NCBI RefSeq assembly: GCF_964188315.1
Contig: NC_135667.1
Location: 5,704,001-5,768,000 of the forward strand
Origin: Podarcis muralis
Lineage: Eukaryota
Reading direction: 5' to 3'
Length of the DNA: 64,000 nucleotides
The translations under genes were made by a program, and so were the position numbers. Each line of letters opens with the position of its first letter. The first letter of the stretch is position 1. The notes beneath the pieces are model-generated. The model saw only the letters and a program-made list of their open reading frames with translations, had not been told where the DNA came from and did no database searches. Of this stretch, positions 14,155-47,100 are shown piece by piece.

Positions 14155-14820
14155 ATGACTGAAGAGGTTCCCGCCGCGCCCGTCGCCGCGCTGCCGGCTG
14201 TCAAGGCTCCGGCCAAGAAGGCCAAGAAGGCGGCGGCCGCCGCCCCGAAGTCCCGCAAGGCTTCGGGCCCCAGCGTGACGGAGCTGCTGACCCAGGCGGT
14301 GACCGCGTCCAAGGAGCGCGGCGGCATCTCCCTGGCCGCGCTGAAGAAGTCGCTGGCGGCCGCCGGCTACGACGTGGAGCGGAACAACAGCCGTATCAAG
14401 CTGGGCCTGAAGAGCCTGGTGACCCGGGGGATCCTGCTGCAGACCAAGGGCACGGGCGCCTCGGGGTCCTTCAAGCTCAATAAGAAGCAGGCGGACAACA
14501 AGGACAAGGCGCCCAAGAAGAAGCCGGCGGCGGCGGCCGCGAAAAGCAAAAAGCCCGCGGCCAAGAAGCCCGCCAGCGCCGCCAAGAAGGTGAAGAAGGC
14601 AGCCGCCACCAAGAAGGGCGTCAAGAAGCCGGCCAAGAAGCCCGCGGCAGGCGCCAGGAAGGCCGCCAAGAGCCCCAAGAAGCCCAAGGCGGCGGCGGCC
14701 AAAAGCAAGAAGGCCGCCAAGAGCCCCGCCAAGGCGAAGGCAGCCAAGCCCAAAGCGAAGCCCAAGACCCCCAAGGCGAAAGTCGCCAAGCCCAAGAAGG
14801 CGGCGCCGAAAAAGAAGTAG
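14155..14820 (+). CDS. Replication-dependent linker histone H1 (221 aa)
   Basis: Globular domain GPSVTELL...[13 protein letters not shown]...[13 protein letters not shown]...[13 protein letters not shown] and a Lys/Ala/Pro tail. Intronless, with H1 promoter and 3' stem-loop. Confidence 0.97.
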
Positions 14821-14874
14821 GAAGGACCCGCTCGGCTTCCGCGAGAGGCAGCAGCGCTCCTCGTTAACCCCAAA

Positions 14875-14890
14875 GGCTCTTTTAAGAGCC
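14875..14890 (+). terminator. Histone 3' stem-loop (H1)
   Basis: GGCTCTTTTAAGAGCC followed by ACCCA and a purine-rich downstream element (AAAGAAAG). Confidence 0.95.
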
Positions 14891-15505
14891 ACCCACAAAT
14901 TCAAAGAAAGTGCTGAATTTCCTTTGCCATGTGAGGTGTTTCGGTCATGTGATGCGAGTGCCGCAGTTGTAGAATCTTAGTTGGTCCTATCCCTTGCACA
15001 GCCCCCCCTCCAATTCGAAACCACACCGCACCCGGCTGAGCAAATGTGTGGTAGTAGTAACGTTATTGCTGCATTTCTAGGCTTTCCTTTTCGGGTATCC
15101 CGTTGCTCATTTCCCCCCGCCGGCTTTTTTATCCGTGCTAAGTCACTTGACATTAATGTTTCTGCAACTTTGTTTTACGGGGGGGAGGGGAAGACACGTG
15201 GCAATGTGGGTGGGGAGAAAGCAAGTGGTTGCTGCCATGATGCTTTTAGGCGGAAGGGGGAGGGTAAAAATGGATTTGCTTTCCCTTAGAATGCGACCCC
15301 AGGGCCTCCTAAAAAGGGGGCAAAGTCGCTGAAGGAGGGTACAAGTCGAAGGGGCAAGATGCATGTGAGACGCCTGTAAATTGCACAGAAGTACCACGCC
15401 GCCGTGTCCTTTAACATTCCCAGCAACTGGTGCTTAATGCACAATACCGAACTAGCAATTGAACATAAGATTGCAGTAATTAACAGCTTTTTAAGGTTAT
15501 GTGGT

Positions 15506-15521
15506 GGCTCTTAAAAGAGCC
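15506..15521 (-). terminator. Histone 3' stem-loop (H3)
   Basis: Reverse complement reads GGCTCTTTTAAGAGCC followed by ACCAC. Confidence 0.95.
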
Positions 15522-15567
15522 TTTGGGTTTTTGAACGTAGGAGGCCCCTACTTTGACAACGAGTATC

Positions 15568-16002
<435 letters not shown>

Positions 16003-32505: not shown

Positions 32506-32630
32506 GGAATAGCAAAGTCGGTAGAGCATGAGACTCTTAATCTCAGGGTTGTGGATTCCAACCCCACATTGGGCAAAAGATTCCTGCATTGCATGGGGTG
32601 GGCTGGATGACCCTCGGGGTCCCTAGGATT
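32506..32630 (+). mobile_element. tRNA-Lys-derived SINE with CR1-like tail
   Basis: GTCGGTAGAGCATGAGACTCTTAATCTCAGGG head followed by GGGCTGGATGACCCTCGGGGTCCC. Confidence 0.6.
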
Positions 32631-33810: not shown

Positions 33811-35060
33811 TAGGTTTGGTATGCTTTAACGTATTATAACCCCCCCCCCCCCAATTTTATTATTTTTATTATTTTGTAAGCCTCTTAGGTTTGTTTGTTT
33901 TTTCACAATCATACAACCAAGCAGTGTATAACTGTTACAGAATAAATAAAACAAACAAATAAAAAATGACTGACTTGGGGAGGGGATTTGAACCTTGGTC
34001 TCTCCCAGGCTTTGCCCCAAACTTTCTTTTTTGTGGTTGAATAATTCTTATTAATTTTCAGTTACAAAAATCCAATAGGCGCCATATTCCATTAACACCA
34101 AACGGCAATACCAATTCAAATACAAATCAATTGCGTAGGCAATTATAAATTTTGTTTGGCTTCCCACGTGCTGTACTTCCAAGGCCCGATTCCCTTCAGT
34201 TCTGCCTCCAGACTTTTGCTCAAACCAAATACAATCCACTCTTGATAAAATCCCTTATACCGCAGCTACAGTAATTAACTTCACTTCGCGTTCACACATA
34301 TAATAATTTGCAAATTCGCAAGCCAAGTTCTCCTTTCTTCTTCCTGTGTGAGGTTTTAATTTGTTCCTTTAATCCTTTATCAATTATTATGCCCATATTA
34401 GTTATTCCTGATCCCTGTGTGGCTTACGGCTTGAAGTCTCTCTCTTTCTTCTCAACTCTTCTGATTGCAACTGTAAAATTCCACTTTCGATTTCAGGCAA
34501 GGGAGTATTGCCCAGTCTTAAACCAGCAGTTTCCAAACCTTTTCAGCCTAGCGCACCCCTTTTACCAGCTCCATAAACTCACCCCCCTGACCCGACCCCA
34601 TTAGAAGCACGATTCAGATTTGCACAACCCACTAAGGAAGATAATAGCACAGTAAAATTAAAAAAAGAGTAGCAACTGACTGCACATTTTATTCAAAATT
34701 CAGTTGAAACCATTAAGTTGAACCAATTCGACAAACTGGTGAACTTGATTTTAAAAAATACCAGCTTTCCAAAGTCTAAAAACCAGGTGCCCCTCTAGCA
34801 CACACACACACCACCACCCTAGGAAACCCCCACCCAATTTGGGAAACCAGTGCTCTAACCACTGCTCCTTGCTGCCTTTCCACCCAGCGGGGTTCTGCCC
34901 CTCCGATTCTTTGGAACATCCTCCCATTGTGAAGGTTCATCCCTCTGTCTCCTTTTCTTTTTAATAATATTTTTTATTAGTTTTCAATTAAAATCCAATA
35001 ATAGCCTCATGATAACAACGCCAATTTATAATGCAATTATTGATACCAATCGTTCAAATC

Positions 35061-35403
35061 GGCCTCGGTCCAGTATACCTGAAGGAGCGTCTCCACCTCC
35101 ATCGTTCTGCCCGGACACTGAGGTCCAGCACCGAGGGCCTTCTGGCGGTTCCCTCACTGCGAGAAGTGAAATTACAGGGAACCAGGCAGAGGGCCTTCTC
35201 GGTGGTGACACCCACCCTGTGGAACTCCCTCCCACCAGATGTCAAAGAGAAAAATAACTACCAAACTTTTAGAAGACATCTAAAGGCAGCCCTGTTTAGG
35301 GAAGCTTCTAATGTTTAATAGGTTATTGTATTTTAGTGTTTTGTTGGAAGCCGCCCAGAGTGGCTGGGGGGACCCAGGCAGATGGGCGGGGTATAAATAA
35401 TAA

Positions 35404-35457
<54 letters not shown>
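35061..35457 (+). mobile_element. L2-type LINE 3' fragment with (ATT)n tail
   Basis: GLGPVYLKERL...FRRHLKAALF. Confidence 0.8.
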
Positions 35458-35459
<2 letters not shown>

Positions 35460-36022
35460 AATCCCTCTGTCTCCTGGAGGCTGGTCTCGGCTGCAACTGT
35501 GTTCAGCTGAACTTTTCCTTTCTTTCTATGGAAACTTTTGTTTAATTCTCGTTACGATTTTGTGTGAGGGCTCTGCGGAACTCCCAGCTGCTTTGGTTAG
35601 AAGGTTTAACGGCCTGCCTGCTTTTCTGACCTTCTGCAGGAGACGAGGATTCTTGGAAGAGAGAAGAAAACCCACTTCCTCAGAAACCAAGGGGGCCGGG
35701 CCAGACGGGGCTGCCTGCCTTTGTGGCCTGCCTCCACTTCCGCCCAGGCTGAGATCGCGGCACAGAGTGAGGGCTGCGTGTGGGGATTTCTACTGCCGAA
35801 GAGCTTTCTGCACAAGAAAGAGAGAGACCAGGAGGCCAAGCACCCCTGCAGGACTCATTTCAAGAGGTGGCCTTGACCCAGAAGCCCTCCTCCTCACCCC
35901 ACATCAGACTGACTTGAAGACCGGCCAACGTCGCCTTCAAGGAAGCCCAGGACCAAGAAGGGAGAGAGAGAGAGAAAGGAACACATTGACATCAACCTTG
36001 GCACCTGAGATCTCAGCTGGAG

Positions 36023-38041
36023 ATGGTATCATACCCGAGGCTGGCCACCCAGTGGCAAGAAAAATGGCTTGCTGAGCTCCAGCGAGCCCCTGATTTTGAG
36101 GAAGCCATCCAGGAGCTCACAAAGGACCTCTCCGCAAGAGGGAGGAGGGCAGCCCAGGGCAGATGGAGAGGCCCTGTGCAGTACCACAGCGCCACGGCCA
36201 CAAAGAACATCCAGTACTTGTACGACGTCAACAAGGCCGAAGCTCTGAGGAAGATCCTTGAGCCTCCCCCTCCTCCTTGCGAGATCCCCGCCACGGAGAT
36301 CTACAAACACTTCTCCGAAGCGTTCGCTAGCGAGGGCTGGGGCCTTTCCCCGCGTCTGCATGGCTGGCCTCGCCTTCCCGCCATGAGAGGCTCCGCCGGC
36401 CTGGAGAGAGACTTCGCCCCCAGAGAGGTTAAGGAGATGCTCCACCACATCAAGAAGAAGAACGTGGGGAAGGATAAGCTGACGCCCGCCTTTCTGAGCC
36501 AGCAAGACCCCGGGTGCCTGGTGCTGACCGCCGTTTTCAACCAGTGCAAGCGGCTGCGTCGCATCCCCTCCGAGTGGAAGAGATCGGAGACCATCCTCAT
36601 CTTCAAAGGCGGCGACGCCAAGGAGCTGAAGAGCTGGAGGCCCATCGCCATGTGCGACACCCTGTACAAGATGTACGCCCGGTGTCTGAACCGCCGCATC
36701 CACACCTGGGTCATCGAGGGTGGCGCCATCTGCCCGCAACAGAAATACGACACGGGGTGCGTCTTCATCTTGCAGGCTTTGCTGGACGAGTGCCGGCGTT
36801 CGGGGCAGGAGTTTGCCCTCGCCAAGTTAGACCTCTCCAGTGCCTTCAGCTCCATCCCTCACCAGCACGTCTTCAACGTGCTGTCGGAGCTGGGCATGCC
36901 CGAAGGCTTCCTCAGCGTGGTCCGCGATCTGTATAATGGGTGCACCACCACTCTGTCCAGGCTGGGTTGCCCGGATATCCCAATCCAGAAGGGGCTGAAG
37001 CAAGGGTGCCCTCTGAGCTACACCATGTTCAAGCTGGCAATGGAGCCGGTTGTCCGATACATCGCCGCTCGATCCACTGGATTCGTTCTGCACGGCCGGA
37101 AGATCGACATCCTGGCTTACGTCGATGATCTGGTGCTTGTGGCCAGCAGCAGGAAAGGGTTGCAGGACGCGTTGGACGCCGCCAGTGAGGCCACCCGCCG
37201 GGTGGGCTTGCGCTTCAACACCGCCAAGTGTGCGTCTCTCCACGTCCGACAATGCCAGGTCCTGCCAACCGAGTTCACCATCCAGGGAGAAGCGATGACC
37301 GGCCTTCAGAGAGGAGAAACGTTCAAGTACTTGGGGGTTCTCCTGAGCTTCCCCGAACAGCCGTCCTCCAAAACCTTCTACAAAGAGTGGCTTGAAGAAC
37401 TGGGAGAGATCGACGGTTCGCTGTTGACCCCCGGGCAAAAGATGGACGCTCTCAAGACTGTCCTGCTGCCCAAAATCTCATCCTTCCTGAAAGGGCCACC
37501 GGCCGCGAGGAAATGCCTTGAGGAAGCTGACGCCGTCATCGTCAACATGGCGAACAGGTGGCTCGGGGTGGCCCGTAACACCCTCCGGGCCCCCAGGCAT
37601 TGTGGAGGACATGGGATTCTGGAAATGGGACACCTGGCTGATGTTGCAGCGATCACCCACGTCTTCCTTCTGCTGACCAGCCCGGACCCCACCATGAGAT
37701 CGGTGGCGCAAGGCTCCTTTGCCAACACTGTTGCGGAGGAGCAGAACCTCCGTGCAAATCCCTCTGGCAAAGCGCTGGCCCGCTTTCTCAACAGGTCCTC
37801 CAGAGGCCATTTGAGGCTTGGCGGAGGCGTCAGCCCCTGGCACCAGGCTGCCAATGCCACTTGGCACCTCAACAGATCCATTCAACTCCAGTGGTTCTGC
37901 AATGAAAGGCATGTGATTGGCGTGCAGATCCAGATAGATGGCATGAGGCAGCAGTTCTCAGCTGAGAATAGGAGCAGCCTAGAAGGTATTCTGAAGGACC
38001 TCATCTGCAAGAGCTACCCAAGCTACCCTGGGTGGAATTAG
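36023..38041 (+). CDS. Endonuclease-less reverse transcriptase ORF derived from an R2-superfamily (Utopia/NeSL-like) non-LTR retrotransposon; candidate domesticated gene
   Basis: Uninterrupted 672-aa frame. Contains the RT -1/0 region (IQYLYDVNKAEALRKILE), WKRSETILIFKGGD, WRPIAMCDTLYK, KLDLSSAFSSIPH, GLKQGCPLS, AYVDD, FKYLGV, PGQKMDAL and CGGHGI. No C-terminal CCHC finger or PD-(D/E)xK nuclease. Confidence 0.85.
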   Translation: MVSYPRLATQWQEKWLAELQRAPDFEEAIQELTKDLSARGRRAAQGRWRGPVQYHSATATKNIQYLYDVNKAEALRKILEPPPPPCEIPATEIYKHFSEAFASEGWGLSPRLHGWPRLPAMRGSAGLERDFAPREVKEMLHHIKKKNVGKDKLTPAFLSQQDPGCLVLTAVFNQCKRLRRIPSEWKRSETILIFKGGDAKELKSWRPIAMCDTLYKMYARCLNRRIHTWVIEGGAICPQQKYDTGCVFILQALLDECRRSGQEFALAKLDLSSAFSSIPHQHVFNVLSELGMPEGFLSVVRDLYNGCTTTLSRLGCPDIPIQKGLKQGCPLSYTMFKLAMEPVVRYIAARSTGFVLHGRKIDILAYVDDLVLVASSRKGLQDALDAASEATRRVGLRFNTAKCASLHVRQCQVLPTEFTIQGEAMTGLQRGETFKYLGVLLSFPEQPSSKTFYKEWLEELGEIDGSLLTPGQKMDALKTVLLPKISSFLKGPPAARKCLEEADAVIVNMANRWLGVARNTLRAPRHCGGHGILEMGHLADVAAITHVFLLLTSPDPTMRSVAQGSFANTVAEEQNLRANPSGKALARFLNRSSRGHLRLGGGVSPWHQAANATWHLNRSIQLQWFCNERHVIGVQIQIDGMRQQFSAENRSSLEGILKDLICKSYPSYPGWN

Positions 38042-38422
38042 GCCTCGTGTGGCTCAGGCACAAGGCACAAGCCCCTGCTGTTCTCTTGCAAGCTGATCCC
38101 GGACTCTTAACCTCAGACACTGTGCAGACGAATTCTCTCGACCTCACCAAAGCTCAGACCTGGAGAACAATTGTCTTTCAGCCAGTTTCCACCCAATGTC
38201 CATGCAGGTGTCCGTGTGCTTCTCCTGGTCTGTAACTGTGGGTGGGTGGGTGGGAACTGGACAATTGCGGTCCCAGGAGTGAATTGGTGGAAAGGGTTCG
38301 GGGGGGGGGGAGTAAAAGGGCTGCATTCCATTCATTTTGACTCGGACCCATTGAAATCAATGGCCACGTCTAGCTTCTGTCCATTGGTTTTGTTGGGTCT
38401 CCTTGCAGAAAAAGCTAAATTG

Positions 38423-38428
38423 AATAAA
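38423..38428 (+). promoter_or_regulatory. Candidate polyadenylation signal for the RT ORF
   Basis: AATAAA about 380 nt after the stop codon, in non-repetitive-looking sequence. Confidence 0.4.
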
Positions 38429-38640
38429 GCCCACAGGGATTAAGCATATACAAGAACAAGTCTTGCTGAGGAAGGATTCTGTAAAGGGGAATCTTGCCTC
38501 GCCAAACTTCTGGATTTTTTTTTTAATGGGAGTGCTAATAGGCATGCTGATAAAGATGGACCTGGTGGATACTGTGTATATACTTCATGTTCCAAAATGT
38601 TTCTGACAAAGTCCCTTGTGGCCAACTAAATTTAGCCACC

Positions 38641-39790
38641 GTGGAATAATAATAATGATAATGATAATAATTTTTTATTTATATCCTGACCTCCCCGGCC
38701 AAAGCTGGGCTCAGAGCGGCTAACAACAAGTAAAAATAGCACAGTGTACATAAAATCACACAGTCAGTTAATTAAAATACATTCTAAAATCAATTCAGAA
38801 TCAAATTAATGGCAACCATTGGGCTACAGTTCTATGAGGATTACAGGAGACAGGGGGTCAGACTGTGCCTTGGCCAAAGGCCTGGTGGAACAGCTCTGTC
38901 TTGCAGGCCCTGCGGAAAGATGTCAAGTCCCACAGGGCCCTAGTCTCTTGTGGCAGAGTGTTCCACCAGATTGGGGCCACGACCGAAAAAGCCCTGGCTC
39001 TGGTCAGCCTAACCTCCCTGTGGCCCGGGATCTCCAAGATGTTTTTATTTGAAGACTGTAAGGTCCTCCGTGGGACATATCAGGAGAGGTGGTCCCGTAG
39101 GTACGGGGGTCCTAGGCCATATAGGGCTTTAAAGGTTAAAACCAGCACCTTAAACCTGATCCTGTACTCCACCCGGAGCCAGTGCAGCTGGCATAGCACT
39201 GGGTGAATGTGAGGACCCCGTAAGTAGTCTCGCCGCAGCATTCTGCACCCGCTGGAGTTTCTGGGTCAGTCTCAAGGGCAGCCCCACGTAGAGCGAGTTA
39301 CAATAATCCAGTCTGGAGGTGACCGTCGTGTGGATCACAGTGGCGAGGTCAGGGCGAGAGAGGTAAGGAGCCAACTGCTTAGCTTGGTGGATGTGAAAAA
39401 ATGCCGCCTTTGTTCAGGGCCGTCTTAAGCCTATCCGGCGCCGTGGTGCAAAGAATCCCCCTTTCCCAGCGTTGTCGACCTTTCCCCAAACCTCTGCGGG
39501 GATCGCTGTCCTGCAGCGAAGGCTTGGGAAGGAAGCTGCAATCCCGCCAGCCATATGTTTGACGGGGCGCAGCTGGTGGACGTGCAGGGAAAGGGGAGGC
39601 CGCCGGCAAAGCCGCACAGCTCCCCCACTTGCTGGGGGCGGCCCTGAGAGGCCGGCGCCCTGGCGCAACGCTCCCATAAGCCCAATGGAAAAGACGGCCC
39701 TGCCTCTGTTACGGCTGCAACCTGCGCCTCCATAGAAAGGGAGGTGTCGGAGATTATACCCAAACTCTTAACGGACGGCGCTGGCACTAA
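38641..39790 (-). mobile_element. L2-type LINE fragment (second family), interrupted by a hAT MITE
   Basis: VTSRLDYCNSLYVGLPL...VQNAAARLL. Confidence 0.75.
39415..39702. mobile_element. hAT MITE
   Basis: TIR CAGGGCCGTCTT; TSD CCTTTGTT/CCTCTGTT. Confidence 0.8.
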
Positions 39791-40170
39791 TTGCGCCCCC
39801 GAAAGAGATGGGAGTTGCCCCCCCAATCCCATATCGTCCAGACCCAGCCAAAGGACCTCTGTCTTCGAAGGATTTCAGGAGAGCTGTCCTTTGGGTTAGT
39901 AGCTCCAAGTGTCATTAAGACTCCCAGTTCCCATCAGCCTGAGCCAGCACAGTCAATGATCAGGCATGATGGGAGTCGTAGTTCAACCATTTTTGGAGAC
40001 CACAGCAGTTGGCTATGGCTGTCCTCTAAGAAACCTGCAGGCAGGATGCAAGCACCGGGATCCAAGCGCCTGTGTTTTTCAGCAACTGAGCATAGATATT
40101 ACGGCTAGGAGCCATCAATAGTTTCTATAATTTGTCCAGTCCTATTTTAAAGCCATTAGGTTAGCAGGAA

Positions 40171-44186: not shown

Positions 44187-47100
44187 CTCAAACCTTTATT
44201 GCATTAGCAAACTGCCATAGCAAAATAAGACAATACAAAAAAGAAAAAAGACAAACTAGAGACAAGCAACCCAGCAAAATTCAGGTGTTTTGGCTGGCGT
44301 AGTGACATTTAAGTTACCCGAAGACAATAATGCAAAGATATAGTAGCCAGCGCCCAAAAACTAGTATGCGGGTATATATAAAGCACAAAATGGCCCCAGA
44401 ACAGACTCAGCATATTGAGTTAAAAGTAATAAAAGAATTAAAACAGGTCCAGGTCTAGGGCACGCTACCCTGTCAGAGTAGCCCTGAGTTTCAGAGCCTG
44501 CACTATGAAGATTGCCACCCCACGTGAGATTTGGGGATTTGCGTCCACAAGAAGCGATTTCAAACAGTCTTCCTTAGATGTAATGGTGGACGGGATCAAA
44601 AGGAGGAGCTTAGATCTTATTGGCTCATAAATAGGGCAGTAGAAAAAGAAATGTATGAAGTCCTCTACTTCATTCATTGTGCATGGACATAGACGCTGGG
44701 TAATAGGGGTCTTAGAGTAAATCCCCTGCAGGAAGGCCGTGGGTATAGAATGGAAGCGGGCCATTGTAAACGCTCTTCTCAAATTGGGCTCCGTCAGGTC
44801 TATCAAGTAGTTGGCAAGTGATCTTACCACTTTCACTTTAGGGAGCCACATGGAAAGGCGAGCTGAGGTGGACTGTGCCCGGTCCATGGCCTCGTCTCTT
44901 GTAAGAATCCAGGCCCGGATTTTATGTTTGTCCCAAGAGGACAGCGAGTCAAGATTTGGGAGAGAGTAGCGTGCAGTAATAGTCACCATGGCCTTGGACC
45001 ATTTATTGCTTTGAGAACACGTTAAAAAGGCTTGCCTGGCTAGTAGGGAACCTGGGGCATTGATTAATTTACAATAAAAGCTAATAATTCTAATGTGGGC
45101 TCTCGCAACAATGGAGGGGAGGCCCAGTTCTGTTCTTAACTGTGCTGCAACCGAGCCCTTGGGGAGACCCAGTATCTTCCGTGCAAAAGAGTTTTGTAGA
45201 ATCTCCAGCCGTTGTAGTGTTTTTAAATTCCACCCCCAGATTTCAACCCCATACAGTAACATCGGGAGGACTTTGCTGATAAATGCTTTTCTGATTGGTG
45301 GAACCAGCTGGCCGCCTTTTGCATAGTAGAATTTCTCCAAGGCTTTGATGGTTCTGCGGGCAGCCAGGATGGTTGTATTTAGGTGAGCTGACCAGCTAAG
45401 CCCATGCTGAAAAAAGATACCCAAATACTTGAATGCTGAACAATGTTCAATAGAATGGCCCTCAAAATTCCAGAGTGACTTCCGAGTTTTCGTGCCAAAA
45501 GTAAGAATTTTGGTTTTGGCGAAATTAATTTTAAGGGAGTTGGTATCACAATATGTCATGAGCCCTCTGAGCGTGTTGTTTAAGCCCAGCTTGGTTAATG
45601 ACAGTATCACCATGTCGTCCGCATAGAGTAATATGGGGATCTTGAGCTGTTGTAAGGAGGGGGCAGATTGATTTAGGGCCTTCATAGTTGTGACGATGTC
45701 ATTGATATAGAAATTGAATAGAAAAGGGGCCAAGAGGCAACCCTGTTTGACCCCTTTATTCAGAGGGAAAGAATCAGAAAGAGCTCCCAGAGGGCCGAAT
45801 TTTACTCTGGCCGATATGTCATTATGAATTTCCATAAGAAGGAGGAGGAGTCTCTTATCTATGCTGGTATGACTAAGCTTCTGCCATAGCCTATCTCTGG
45901 GAATGGAGTCAAAGGCGGAGGTCAGGTCCACAAAAGCCGCGTGTAGTTTGCAGTTGAACCTGTTTAGGTATTTATCAATCAGGGTAAGTAGAACAAGACA
46001 TTGGCCAGATGTGCTGTGACCTTTGCGGAAGCCAGCCTGTTCCGGATGGAATAGCTTTGTTTCTTCTGCCCACTCAATTAATTTCTCTAGCAAGAATCTA
46101 GAGTAAACCTTGTATGATATGTCCAACAGGCTGATAGGTCGGTAGTTACGCGGATCTTGTGGGTCCCCCTTTTTATGTATTGGGATAACTATGCTCTGTT
46201 TCCAGTTAGGTGGGATCTTAAGAGTAGCATTAATGGTGGTAAAGAGAGATGCTAAGATAGGGGCCCACCACGACTGGTTCGATAAGAATACCTCAGGTGG
46301 TATCATATCCTCCCCCGGGGATTTATCCCCTGATAGCATGCTAATTAGTTGAGTACATCTCTCTGGGGAGACTGGCTCCCAGGTGGGCAAGGCAGATGCT
46401 GGAAGGGTGGTGACTACATTTACGTCAGAATCTGAGGTGGAATACAGCTGAGCAAAGTGAGAGTGCCAGCTGGCTGCTGTGATGTTATTAACAATGAATG
46501 AGGGGGGTCTTAGACCTGCATTAATTAAATTCCAAAATTTCTTGTCGTCACGGGTTTTAATGGCCACTGACAGAGCCGACCAGCGTTCTTTCGCAAAGAG
46601 CAATTTCTTATGTTGGAGCAGCTTCTTATAGTATGAACGAAATTGGGCTAACTCCCTGATTTTGCTCTGAGTGCTGTCTGATTTCATGTCAGACTGAAGA
46701 AATCTAAGCCTACTTCTGCACTGTTTGCATTCTTGGTCGAACCAGGTTTGATTCTTCCAGGTTAGAATCGCACGGGAAGGTTTCGTAAGCGAAGGGAGCA
46801 AGTAGGCTAGAATTTGCTGGAAAATTGAGAAATGATTCACATTCGTTGTTAACAGCTGAGCTTTCAGGGCTAGGATCTCAGGGGAATTTAGGAGGACTTT
46901 TATGTCTTGCTCCAGGTAGATGTCCCACTTCTTGCGTCCGGGGGCCAAGGTCAGTGAATCCTGGGGGTGTGGTGAGCTGGGAGGCCCCAGCTGTGTGTGG
47001 TGAAAGGAGATGGCAATTGGAAGGTGGTCACTTTCGGTTCTGTTGAACACGTTGAAACAGTATGCCTCATCATTAAATGCTGAGGAGGACCAGATGTAAT

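What the first reader, a model, noticed from the sequence alone, without database searches (positions are those of the whole stretch)
35613..38428. Intact, endonuclease-less Utopia/NeSL-like reverse transcriptase with host-gene features: candidate domesticated vertebrate RT
Seen in sequence: a 672-codon ORF (36023-38041) with no stop or frameshift. The catalytic aspartates are retained (KLDLSSAF, AYVDD), and third codon positions look C/G-rich. A polypyrimidine+CAG acceptor (cttttctgaccttctgcag) ends at 35639, and AATAAA lies at 38423. The N-terminal LYxxN...ALRKILE...CEIP region and the PGQKMDAL, CGGHGI and ITHVFLLLTSPD motifs resemble, from memory, Utopia/NeSL members of the R2 superfamily. 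Established knowledge: these elements carry a C-terminal CCHC finger and a PD-(D/E)xK restriction-like endonuclease, and Utopia targets U2 snRNA genes. Here the ORF stops just before that region, no downstream frame shows it, and no U2 sequence flanks it. RT motif 2 is also shortened (PQQKYDTGC, where QKGF...EGCxEH is typical). Inference: a dead element this remodelled should have accumulated stops, like the L1, CR1 and L2 relics around it. An open frame points to purifying selection on an immobile RT or RNA-binding protein expressed through a spliced host transcript.
Basis: partly seen in the sequence, partly recalled or inferred. Interest (0 to 1): 0.92.

Follow-up and report, generated by a model that had tools for sequence, protein, structure and literature searches.

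The report
Domesticated endonuclease-less reverse transcriptase gene, lizards
A lizard genome carries a single-copy gene, descended from a Utopia/R2-type jumping element that lost its DNA-targeting and DNA-cutting parts, which natural selection has kept intact with its reverse-transcriptase active site, making it a rare candidate for a host-adopted non-LTR reverse transcriptase in a vertebrate.

Summary
Window 36023-38041 (+) is an uninterrupted 672-codon ORF encoding an R2-superfamily reverse transcriptase (RT) core. It has no N-terminal zinc fingers, no C-terminal CCHC knuckle and no restriction-like endonuclease (RLE), and no remnant of these nearby.

- The ORF is single-copy in same-species DNA.
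- It lies at a collinear locus in Podarcis lilfordi (96% aa identity, same length).
- Between the two species dN/dS is 0.23 (P ~ 9e-9), with no indels while the flanks have many. Off-frame controls give 1.4-1.9.

An exhaustive search found two more endonuclease-less proteins that end at the same position: one from Anolis carolinensis and one from an unidentified host. The four form a clade (support 100/98) sister to full-length turtle elements that carry the RLE. All three catalytic aspartates are kept, but motif 2a is shortened.

Not supported:
- The proposed splice acceptor has no read support.
- The AATAAA is not conserved.
- One RNA-seq run had no reads on the ORF, and others held only trace contigs.

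Anolis synteny could not be tested. No earlier scan note covers this locus, and no prior report was found in the searched literature.

The parts
36023..38041 (+). Complete coding sequence: 672 codons plus stop, for an endonuclease-less RT
   Evidence: ORF list. The P. lilfordi orthologue is 672 aa and 96% identical. dN/dS 0.23 with no indels. Single-copy depth.
36023..36622 (+). N-terminal spacer and NTE region (aa 1-200). Includes the motif-0-like NVGKDKLT at 36461-36484.
   Evidence: Aligns to the spacer/NTE of turtle elements and to R2Pm residues 293-430. dN/dS 0.21 for aa 1-130 and 0.12 for aa 131-260. Helical in the AF2 model.
36623..37339 (+). RT fingers and palm (Pfam RVT_1, aa 201-439)
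   Evidence: Pfam E 1.4e-29. All 12 family-invariant residues are kept: Q240, G245, D270, A274, G324, Q327, G328, S332, F336, D368, D369, K402.
36737..36766 (+). Shortened motif 2a (QQKYDTGCVF, where relatives have QKGFxxxEGCxEHNF)
   Evidence: Alignments A1 and A3. The conserved G, F, E and H are lost. The motif is also degenerate in Anolis but canonical in P0021.
36830..36832 (+). Motif A catalytic Asp (D270, in LDLSSAF)
   Evidence: Sequence. Invariant in all 44 aligned relatives.
37118..37129 (+). Motif C, YVDD (Y366-D369), the catalytic Asp pair
   Evidence: Sequence. D368 and D369 are invariant.
37343..37702 (+). Thumb (aa 441-560), with the PGQKMDAL and CGGHGI motifs
   Evidence: Aligns to the R2Pm thumb. 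Helical, pLDDT about 90. dN/dS 0.25.
37703..38038 (+). First part of the Linker (aa 561-672). The ORF ends where relatives continue into KPDQGK, the CCHC knuckle and the RLE.
   Evidence: Folds confidently as helix, three strands, helix. dN/dS 0.31.
35458..36022 (+). Upstream non-coding stretch between a SINE tail and the ATG. Possible 5' UTR or promoter; function not shown.
   Evidence: 92-95% identical to P. lilfordi, with 26 gap columns that break any frame. An in-frame stop lies 12 codons before the ATG. No RNA reads.
35621..35639 (+). Unverified.
   Evidence: Present and conserved in P. lilfordi with one C>T change. No joint or loose end in any run. A similar tract precedes the ORF in L003.
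38042..38646 (+). Downstream non-coding stretch up to an inverted SINE. Contains AATAAA at 38423-38428.
   Evidence: Neutral-like divergence with indels. The AATAAA is not conserved between species or individuals. No RLE remnant.
35000..35457 (+). High-copy SINE with an (ATT)n tail, bounding the unit upstream (extent approximate)
   Evidence: Summed contig depth of 1e6 in DNA runs, and loose ends at 35060. Microsatellite at 35404-35457.
38647..39400 (-). High-copy repeat(s), starting with an (AAT)n tail in inverse orientation, bounding the unit downstream (extent approximate)
   Evidence: Depth 1e4-1e5. Sequence.

Best explanation
This is a single-copy host gene of lacertid lizards, probably of much older squamate origin. 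It descends from a Utopia-type, RLE-class non-LTR retrotransposon of the R2 superfamily. The ancestor lost its N-terminal zinc fingers and its C-terminal zinc knuckle and restriction-like endonuclease. In R2 these are the modules that bind, melt and nick target DNA. What remains is the spacer/NTE, RT fingers and palm, thumb and first half of the linker. In R2 these hold the template RNA and polymerise.

Shown here: the locus is fixed, single-copy, orthologous between two lizard species, and under purifying selection on the protein in every domain. The catalytic Asp triad and all family-invariant residues are kept.

Inferred: the protein cannot retrotranspose itself. It acts in trans as an RNA-binding protein that is most likely still a polymerase, using 3' ends it does not create itself. 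I put roughly 45% on real RT activity and roughly 30% on RNA binding only. Motifs 0 and 2a are altered, which suggests changed template handling. The biological role is unknown; germline, repair, telomere or defence roles are all possible.
For: Identity and fold:
- RVT_1 domain.
- The best solved-structure hits are R2 proteins, by sequence at 1.4e-39 and by fold for a confident model: pLDDT 88.8, TMq 0.70 to R2Pm 9nl2_A.
- No ZF, CCHC or RLE in any frame.

Single copy:
- One 3194-bp contig at unique depth 12.2 spans 35469-38637 in same-species DNA. Nothing else matches at >=90%.

Orthology:
- The window from 25 to 44 kb is collinear with P. lilfordi OX395138.1.

Selection:
- 68 differences, falling 15/12/41 by codon position.
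- dN 0.020, dS 0.085, ratio 0.23, P = 9e-9.
- The ratio is 0.12-0.31 in each of five segments. Off-frame controls give 1.4 and 1.9.
- dS matches the flank divergence of about 7%.
- No indels in 2019 nt, against 26 gap columns in the 400 nt upstream.
- Only 0.7% of neutral simulations keep the frame open.
- Within the species there are 3 variants in the 2019-nt ORF against at least 8 in the roughly 600 nt downstream.

Depth:
- Anolis P0020 (712 aa) and P0021 (663 aa) also lack the RLE and stop at the same alignment position.
- The four form a clade with support 100/98, sister (100/99) to RLE-bearing turtle elements. One of those turtle copies is a decayed intronic copy with stops.

Active site:
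- D270, D368, D369, K402 and the QG of motif B are invariant.
- 75-80 of the 99 element-conserved residues are kept.

Domain logic of R2: PMC11601368.
Against: - Expression is not shown. About 1.9 Gb of one bulk RNA-seq run gave no reads. A second 'RNA?' run held only two short low-depth contigs, which could be DNA carry-over.
- No gene model for this protein is on record for the window species.
- Selection was measured on a single species pair. Organism B is P. lilfordi-like and so not independent.
- Anolis synteny could not be tested, and the host of P0021 is unknown.
- The lacertid-Anolis protein distance (1.69) is about 44 times the within-lacertid distance (0.038). That is more than the likely ratio of divergence times. 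Either evolution was faster in the past or these are not strict 1:1 orthologues.
- Motif 2a has lost 6 residues, including the near-invariant G, F, E and H. Motif 0 is altered, and Anolis has HADD where others have YxDD. Polymerase activity may therefore be impaired.
Confidence: 0.72

Rival explanations
1. A domesticated but non-catalytic protein. The RT fold is kept only as an RNA-binding scaffold or as a dominant-negative inhibitor that sequesters RNA of related elements.
For: Motif 2a is shortened and motif 0 altered. Anolis has HADD in place of YxDD. The vertebrate precedent RTOM is an RT-derived gene under purifying selection that has lost its catalytic Asps (PMC9514029). In R2, the NTE, thumb and linker form the RNA-recognition surface.
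Against: All three catalytic Asps, the motif D Lys and the motif B QG are invariant in all four endonuclease-less proteins, despite only 38-43% overall identity. That is hard to explain without selection on the active site. A repressor would lose its purpose once the parent family died out, and no active parent is seen.
Confidence: 0.3
2. A low-copy, endonuclease-less retroelement lineage that is still occasionally mobile, for example inserting at pre-existing DNA breaks. It would then be a surviving 'master copy' and not a host gene, and the similar proteins in Anolis and the unknown host would be independent insertions.
For: Endonuclease-deficient retroelements do exist, such as the telomere-associated Penelope-like elements (PMC3846280, listed). 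The deep branch lengths exceed clock expectation. Anolis synteny is untested. Kojima and Jurka could not find termini for the Anolis Utopia because of its low copy number.
Against: A fixed copy at an orthologous site evolves neutrally unless the host benefits. Here dN/dS is 0.23 and there are no indels between orthologous copies. The gene is single-copy with no other insertion at >=90% identity. It lacks every DNA-binding module. No target-site duplication, poly(A) or microsatellite tail, or U2 remnant is visible at its ends.
Confidence: 0.08
3. A dead, truncated transposon relic whose frame has stayed open by chance or because it is young.
For: Young LINEs with intact ORFs occur in this very window (44465-47773). 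Expression is not shown.
Against: The copy predates the split from P. lilfordi (dS 0.085). Only 0.7% of neutral simulations stay open even when indels are ignored. Substitutions fall 15/12/41 by codon position, and the binomial P is 9e-9. The flanks carry many indels and the ORF none. The truncation point is shared with proteins only 38-43% identical.
Confidence: 0.04

Closest known systems
Utopia (U2-snRNA-gene-associated, RLE-type non-LTR retrotransposons; Kojima and Jurka 2015, PMC4640811), including the reptile families Utopia-1/2_CMy and Utopia-1_ACar
   Same: The RT core and the spacer/NTE, thumb and linker sequence. The nearest mobile relatives are turtle elements with CCHC and RLE (36-43% identity, sister clade at 100/99). 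Next come elements from ants, Nasonia and nematodes, which is Utopia's reported host range.
   Different: No N-terminal zinc fingers, no C-terminal zinc finger or RLE, no U2 flank or U2-like target motif, and a single copy at a fixed orthologous locus under host-level purifying selection. No Repbase reference sequences were available, so placement inside Utopia is indirect.
R2 retrotransposon proteins (R2Pm 9nl2, R2Tg 9nl3/9dou, R2Bm 8gh6)
   Same: The best solved-structure matches by both sequence and fold. The order NTE, RT, thumb, linker is shared, as are motifs A to E.
   Different: Only about 22% identity. No ZnF or Myb, no ZnK or RLE, not in 28S rDNA, and motif 2a is shortened.
RTOM1-3 of monotremes (PMC9514029)
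   Same: Vertebrate genes derived from an RT, conserved between species under purifying selection.
   Different: RTOM derives from a retroviral RT and has lost all three catalytic aspartates. The lizard gene derives from a non-LTR element and keeps them. RTOM has testis expression shown; this gene has none shown.
rvt genes (single-copy domesticated RT-like genes of fungi, rotifers and bacteria; PMC10680173)
   Same: Single-copy, endonuclease-less RT genes under purifying selection with intact catalytic residues.
   Different: A different RT lineage and different hosts. rvt performs non-templated polymerisation. No relationship was shown here.
Telomerase reverse transcriptase (TERT)
   Same: A cellular RT with no nuclease of its own that extends pre-existing DNA 3' ends from an RNA template (established knowledge).
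   Different: A far older and different RT lineage, with TEN/TRBD domains and a dedicated RNA. No evidence links this gene to telomeres.
Lyosin (L1 ORF1p-derived exon of MYL4 in sauropsids; PMC12129022)
   Same: A non-LTR-derived coding sequence co-opted in reptiles and under purifying selection (dN/dS about 0.4-0.5).
   Different: Lyosin derives from ORF1p, an RNA chaperone, and is an exon of a host gene. Here the enzyme (RT) itself is kept as a stand-alone ORF.

Membership tests
Utopia non-LTR retrotransposon | RT groups phylogenetically with Utopia elements | tested here: inconclusive
   The sister group is RLE-bearing turtle elements (100/99). The next relatives come from ants, Nasonia and nematodes, matching Utopia's host list. 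No Repbase Utopia, NeSL or R4 reference sequences were available to place in the tree.
Utopia non-LTR retrotransposon | One to three N-terminal zinc fingers | tested here: not met
   The ORF starts in the spacer region. There is an in-frame stop 12 codons upstream, and no ZF hit upstream by tblastn.
Utopia non-LTR retrotransposon | C-terminal zinc finger (CCHC) plus restriction-like endonuclease | tested here: not met
   There are 307 aa after YxDD, against about 540-560 in full-length relatives. No remnant in any frame, in the window or in L001.
Utopia non-LTR retrotransposon | Insertion in or next to U2 snRNA genes or U2-like target sequence | tested here: not met
   Rfam finds no U2. No U2-like junction motif in 35000-39500.
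Utopia non-LTR retrotransposon | Mobile: multiple copies or polymorphic positions | tested here: not met
   Single-copy depth with one contig. Same locus in P. lilfordi.
R2 retrotransposon | Myb and ZnF DNA-binding domains and insertion at the 28S rDNA site | tested here: not met
   Pfam finds only RVT_1. The flanks are SINEs and unique DNA, with no rRNA hit in Rfam.
R2 superfamily RT core | NTE, RT, thumb and linker fold with motifs A to E | tested here: met
   phmmer 1.4e-39 to R2Pm. Foldseek TMq 0.70, E 1.5e-29. All family-invariant residues are kept.
Domesticated (host) gene derived from a transposon | Single copy at an orthologous, syntenic position in different species | tested here: met
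   Met for the window species against P. lilfordi. Not testable for Anolis.
Domesticated (host) gene derived from a transposon | Purifying selection between orthologues | tested here: met
   dN/dS 0.23, P = 9e-9, no indels, off-frame controls above 1.
Domesticated (host) gene derived from a transposon | Loss of the functions needed for its own mobility | tested here: met
   No ZF, ZnK or RLE.
Domesticated (host) gene derived from a transposon | Transcribed and translated | tested here: inconclusive
   No reads in one raw RNA-seq run. Two short low-depth contigs in one 'RNA?' run, and eight such runs hold 8-14% of the sampled words. No proteomic data.
Catalytically competent reverse transcriptase | Asp triad (motifs A and C), motif B QG, motif D Lys | tested here: met
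   D270, D368, D369, Q327, G328 and K402 are invariant.
Catalytically competent reverse transcriptase | Intact finger motifs 0 and 2a of non-LTR RTs | tested here: not met
   Motif 2a lacks 6 residues, including the conserved G, F, E and H. Motif 0 has lost A, P and Y.
Catalytically competent reverse transcriptase | Polymerase activity | not testable with these tools
   Needs a biochemical assay.

The most novel reading that the evidence does not exclude
Squamate reptiles have carried, for well over 100 million years, a host gene encoding a catalytically active non-LTR (Utopia/R2-type) reverse transcriptase stripped of all DNA-targeting and nuclease modules. It works in trans on cellular or foreign RNA at pre-existing DNA ends, for example in repair, at telomeres, in the germline or in defence. 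Apart from telomerase, it would be the first co-opted RT enzyme of this class in a vertebrate.
Probability: 0.3. Interest if true: 0.9.

Novelty: new variant of a known kind. Interest (0 to 1): 0.78.

Why it matters
Vertebrate co-option of retroelement genes is well documented for gag, env, protease and integrase, and recently for L1 ORF1p. For the reverse transcriptase itself the record is almost empty. There is telomerase (ancient) and the monotreme RTOM genes, which have lost their catalytic residues. The searched literature states that domestication of non-LTR retrotransposon proteins is still largely unexplored (PMC12129022), and I found no report of a co-opted RLE-class RT.

A single-copy, selected RT core with an intact active site and no nuclease would give a natural experiment on what an R2-type RT does when freed from retrotransposition. 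It would offer a new cellular RT to test for roles in repair, telomere, germline or antiviral biology. It would also provide a compact, naturally nuclease-free relative of the R2 enzymes now being used for genome engineering. In addition, it warns that some 'low-copy, old' entries in repeat libraries, possibly Utopia-1_ACar, may in fact be host genes.

Tried and rejected
- **Word-indexed protein searches.** The search with the ORF alone found only P. lilfordi as a close hit. With the four-protein alignment it was swamped by generic RTs and missed even P0020 and P0021. With the C-terminal region of P0021 it returned only P0021 itself. None added clade members.
- **Anolis locus.** It could not be fetched because the exact product is not on record, so synteny is untested.
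- **Transcript contigs.** The window's exact protein is not on record in public assemblies, so no transcript contig could be examined.
- **Host of SRR13336341 (P0021).** Not found in the literature. The L003 flanks match nothing in the lizard or turtle loci.
- **Metagenome scan.** Only distant RTs, at most 32% identity.
- **Third orthologue.** Organism B turned out to be P. lilfordi-like, so it is not a third lineage.
- **Rfam.** No HDV-like ribozyme, U2 or other RNA family near the ORF. Only chance-level miRNA and sRNA hits.
- **RLE on the other strand.** Weak tblastn hits at 43.5 kb (-) belong to the C-terminus of the neighbouring APE-type LINE and were rejected.
- **(ATT)n/(AAT)n flanks as a Dong/R4-type microsatellite target.** Rejected. 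The two repeats are in opposite orientation and are tails of high-copy SINEs.
- **Upstream 171-aa ORF (35560-36075) as coding.** Rejected. It is in a different frame, and indels between the species break it.
- **A misreading corrected.** I first read NeSL-1_ACa as an Anolis element. It is from Acanthamoeba; the Anolis entry is Utopia-1_ACar.
Full report
**1. The observation**

Window 36023-38041 (+) is an uninterrupted ORF of 672 codons starting at an ATG. An in-frame stop lies 12 codons upstream. The protein has a Pfam RVT_1 domain (aa 201-439, E 1.4e-29). GC by codon position is 0.57/0.45/0.76. The polypyrimidine tract plus CAG ending at 35639 and the AATAAA at 38423-38428 are also there.

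**2. What kind of RT it is**

By sequence, the best solved structures are R2 retrotransposon proteins: turtle R2Pm 9nl2 at E 1.4e-39, with query 61-583 matching chain 293-828, followed by R2Tg, R2Bm and then L1 ORF2p.

An AlphaFold2 model built on a 44-sequence alignment is confident (mean pLDDT 88.8, pTM 0.87). Its best structural match is again R2Pm (TMq 0.70, E 1.5e-29).

Full-length relatives (P0002, P0003, P0005, P0022 and a Chelonia mydas genomic copy in L002) continue for about 240 more residues. That extension runs through a KPDQGK motif, RFCDWRF, a CCHC knuckle and a PD-(D/E)xK restriction-like endonuclease. Some relatives also start with C2H2 fingers. The lizard ORF has 307 residues after YxDD, against about 540-560 in those elements.

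tblastn with the full-length proteins finds no trace of the missing N- or C-terminal modules in any frame. This holds for the window and for the orthologous P. lilfordi locus.

In R2, the ZnF/Myb and ZnK/RLE modules bind, melt and nick target DNA. The NTE, thumb and linker hold the template RNA (PMC11601368). The lizard protein therefore keeps the RNA-handling and polymerase part and lacks every DNA-targeting and cutting part.

**3. Is it one gene or a repeat?**

I laid contigs of a DNA run of the same species on 34000-39999. One 3194-bp contig at depth 12.2 covers 35469-38637. Unique neighbouring contigs have depth 7.6-12.9, and nothing else matches at 90% or more. The SINEs on both sides reach summed depths of 1e5 to 1e6. 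The ORF is therefore single-copy at this stringency.

The only other RT signals in the window are unrelated LINEs at about 27% identity.

**4. Orthology and selection**

The closest protein in 5.8 billion is a 672-aa 'hypothetical predicted protein' of Podarcis lilfordi, 96% identical. Its locus (L001; OX395138.1 at about 48.3 Mb) is collinear with the window from 25 to 44 kb at about 93% DNA identity, interrupted only by repeat indels.

Within the ORF:
- There are 68 substitutions, distributed 15/12/41 over codon positions, and no indel.
- The 400 nt upstream carry 26 gap columns, and the downstream flank also has indels.
- Nei-Gojobori estimates are dN 0.020, dS 0.085 and a ratio of 0.23. 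A binomial test against neutrality gives P = 9e-9.
- The ratio is 0.12-0.31 in each of five segments.
- The two off-frames give 1.4 and 1.9.
- dS equals the flank divergence, so the deficit is specific to amino-acid-changing sites.
- With 7% random substitutions and no indels, only 0.7% of simulations keep the frame open.

A second individual of the window species differs at 3 sites in the 2019-nt ORF (Q174R, I506V and one synonymous change) against at least 8 sites in the roughly 600 nt downstream.

A second DNA data set, organism B, shows an indel-free ORF as well. Its differences match P. lilfordi almost one for one, so it is not an independent lineage.

A transposon copy fixed at an orthologous site evolves neutrally unless the host benefits. 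This pattern is therefore the signature of host-level constraint.

**5. How old is it?**

An exhaustive phmmer search of 1.84 billion representatives put two proteins far above all others. One is Anolis carolinensis A0A803TJC4 (P0020, 712 aa, 43% identity, E 1e-144). The other is a 663-aa ORF on a 2.3-kb Logan contig of run SRR13336341 (P0021, 41% identity).

Both lack CCHC and RLE. Both stop within a few residues of the lizard stop, after the same conserved helix.

In a careful ML tree (41 rows, LG+C20), the four endonuclease-less proteins form a clade with support 100/98 and the topology (P0021,(Anolis,(two lacertids))). This clade is sister, at 100/99, to three turtle sequences that represent full-length RLE-bearing elements. 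One of those turtle sequences is a decayed copy with at least three stops in an intron of renalase, mis-annotated as a renalase isoform.

The simplest reading is one ancestral truncation inherited vertically since before the Iguania-Lacertoidea split. From general knowledge, not tested here, that split is on the order of 150-190 Myr old.

Caveats:
- Anolis synteny could not be examined.
- The host of P0021 is unknown.
- The lacertid-Anolis protein distance is about 44 times the within-lacertid distance, more than the likely time ratio. Either past evolution was faster or the relationship is not strict 1:1 orthology.

**6. Family of origin**

After the turtle elements, the next relatives come from ants (Ooceraea, Cataglyphis), Nasonia and nematodes (Plectus, Caenorhabditis). 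This matches the host list of Utopia, which includes Chelonia mydas, Chrysemys, Pelodiscus, Anolis (Utopia-1_ACar, formerly NeSL-1_ACar) and Alligator. In reptiles Utopia has weak U2 specificity. For Anolis its termini could not be determined 'because of low copy numbers, old ages' (PMC4640811).

I could not place Repbase references in the tree.

The locus itself fails every defining feature of a Utopia element other than the RT core: no zinc fingers, no RLE, no U2 or U2-like junction, and no additional copies.

**7. Function**

All residues invariant across the 44 aligned relatives are kept: Q240, G245, D270, A274, G324, Q327, G328, S332, F336, D368, D369 and K402. The Asp triad and the motif D Lys are invariant among the four endonuclease-less proteins despite 38-43% identity. 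Of 99 positions that are at least 80% conserved in the mobile elements, the lizard keeps 75, Anolis 80 and P0021 79. The elements themselves keep a median of 91.

Losses cluster in motif 0 and motif 2a. In the lacertids, motif 2a lacks six residues, including the near-invariant G, F, E and H. It is degenerate in Anolis and canonical in P0021. Motif 0 (VGKDKL) is close to the R2Pm version, PGPDKV.

I infer a protein that still binds RNA and probably still polymerises, with altered template handling, and that depends on 3' ends it does not make itself. A purely RNA-binding or inhibitory role is the main alternative.

The ORF body has a CpG observed/expected ratio of 0.64-0.81, against 0.17-0.42 in the flanks. 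This is compatible with germline hypomethylation but is not evidence of expression.

**8. Expression and gene structure**

This is the weak point.
- About 1.9 Gb (12%) of one bulk RNA-seq run gave no read between 35400 and 38600.
- One 'RNA?' contig set holds two short pieces, 36826-37021 and 37919-38222, at depth 3-4. The second crosses the stop codon unspliced.
- Eight such runs hold 8-14% of the sampled words. DNA carry-over cannot be excluded.
- No joint or loose end supports the proposed acceptor at 35639/35640.

The acceptor-like tract is conserved in P. lilfordi, but so is its neighbourhood. A similar tract precedes the ORF in L003. The AATAAA reads AATACA in P. lilfordi and AATAAG in another individual. 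The 5' region carries frame-breaking indels, so the protein is encoded entirely by the 672-codon ORF.

**9. Novelty**

Full-text searches found no report of a co-opted RLE-class or other non-LTR RT enzyme in vertebrates. The nearest analogues are:
- RTOM in monotremes, which is retroviral in origin and has lost its catalytic Asps.
- The rvt genes of fungi, rotifers and bacteria.
- Lyosin, derived from L1 ORF1p.
- Telomerase.

**10. Verdict**

The central interpretation, a domesticated, immobile RT under purifying selection, is supported for lacertids and probably extends much deeper in squamates. The proposed spliced-transcript and poly(A) model is not supported. Function and expression remain to be shown.

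Noticed in passing
window 44465-47773 (-): An APE-type LINE with an intact 1102-aa ORF2 (Exo_endo_phos plus RVT_1). Young, intact retrotransposon ORFs therefore exist next to the finding.
   Followed up: partly
window 35000-35457 and 38647-39400: Very high-copy SINE-like repeats flank the gene in opposite orientations, with (ATT)n and (AAT)n tails. Summed contig depth in DNA is 1e5-1e6, and they are abundantly present in RNA-seq reads.
   Followed up: partly
window 36301-37800: The ORF body is CpG-island-like (GC about 0.6, CpG observed/expected 0.64-0.81), while the flanks are CpG-depleted (0.17-0.42). This could reflect germline hypomethylation or codon constraint.
   Followed up: no
window 14155-14915 (+) and 15481-15978 (-): Linker histone H1 and core histone H3 genes, each followed by a histone 3' stem-loop (Rfam RF00032). 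This is part of a replication-dependent histone cluster.
   Followed up: partly
window 57465-57537 (-) and 57671-57744 (+): A divergent pair of tRNA-Gly(GCC) genes with identical Rfam scores. A weak tRNA-like hit at 32510-32567 is probably a SINE head.
   Followed up: no
L002 10001-13200 (Chelonia mydas CM026904.1, renalase intron): A decayed Utopia-like element copy with stops and a frameshift. Its 5' part is annotated in NCBI as 'renalase isoform X1' (P0004), which is probably a gene-model artefact.
   Followed up: partly
P0022 (UniParc UPI0007041B95): A turtle-like element protein model that contains the thumb-linker-CCHC segment twice in tandem. This is either an assembly or annotation duplication or a real internal duplication.
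   Followed up: no
L003 1-120: The unidentified-host homologue has a long polypyrimidine tract ending in AG about 105 nt before its first ATG. This echoes the tract upstream of the lizard ORF and hints at a shared upstream intron, but it is untested.
   Followed up: no
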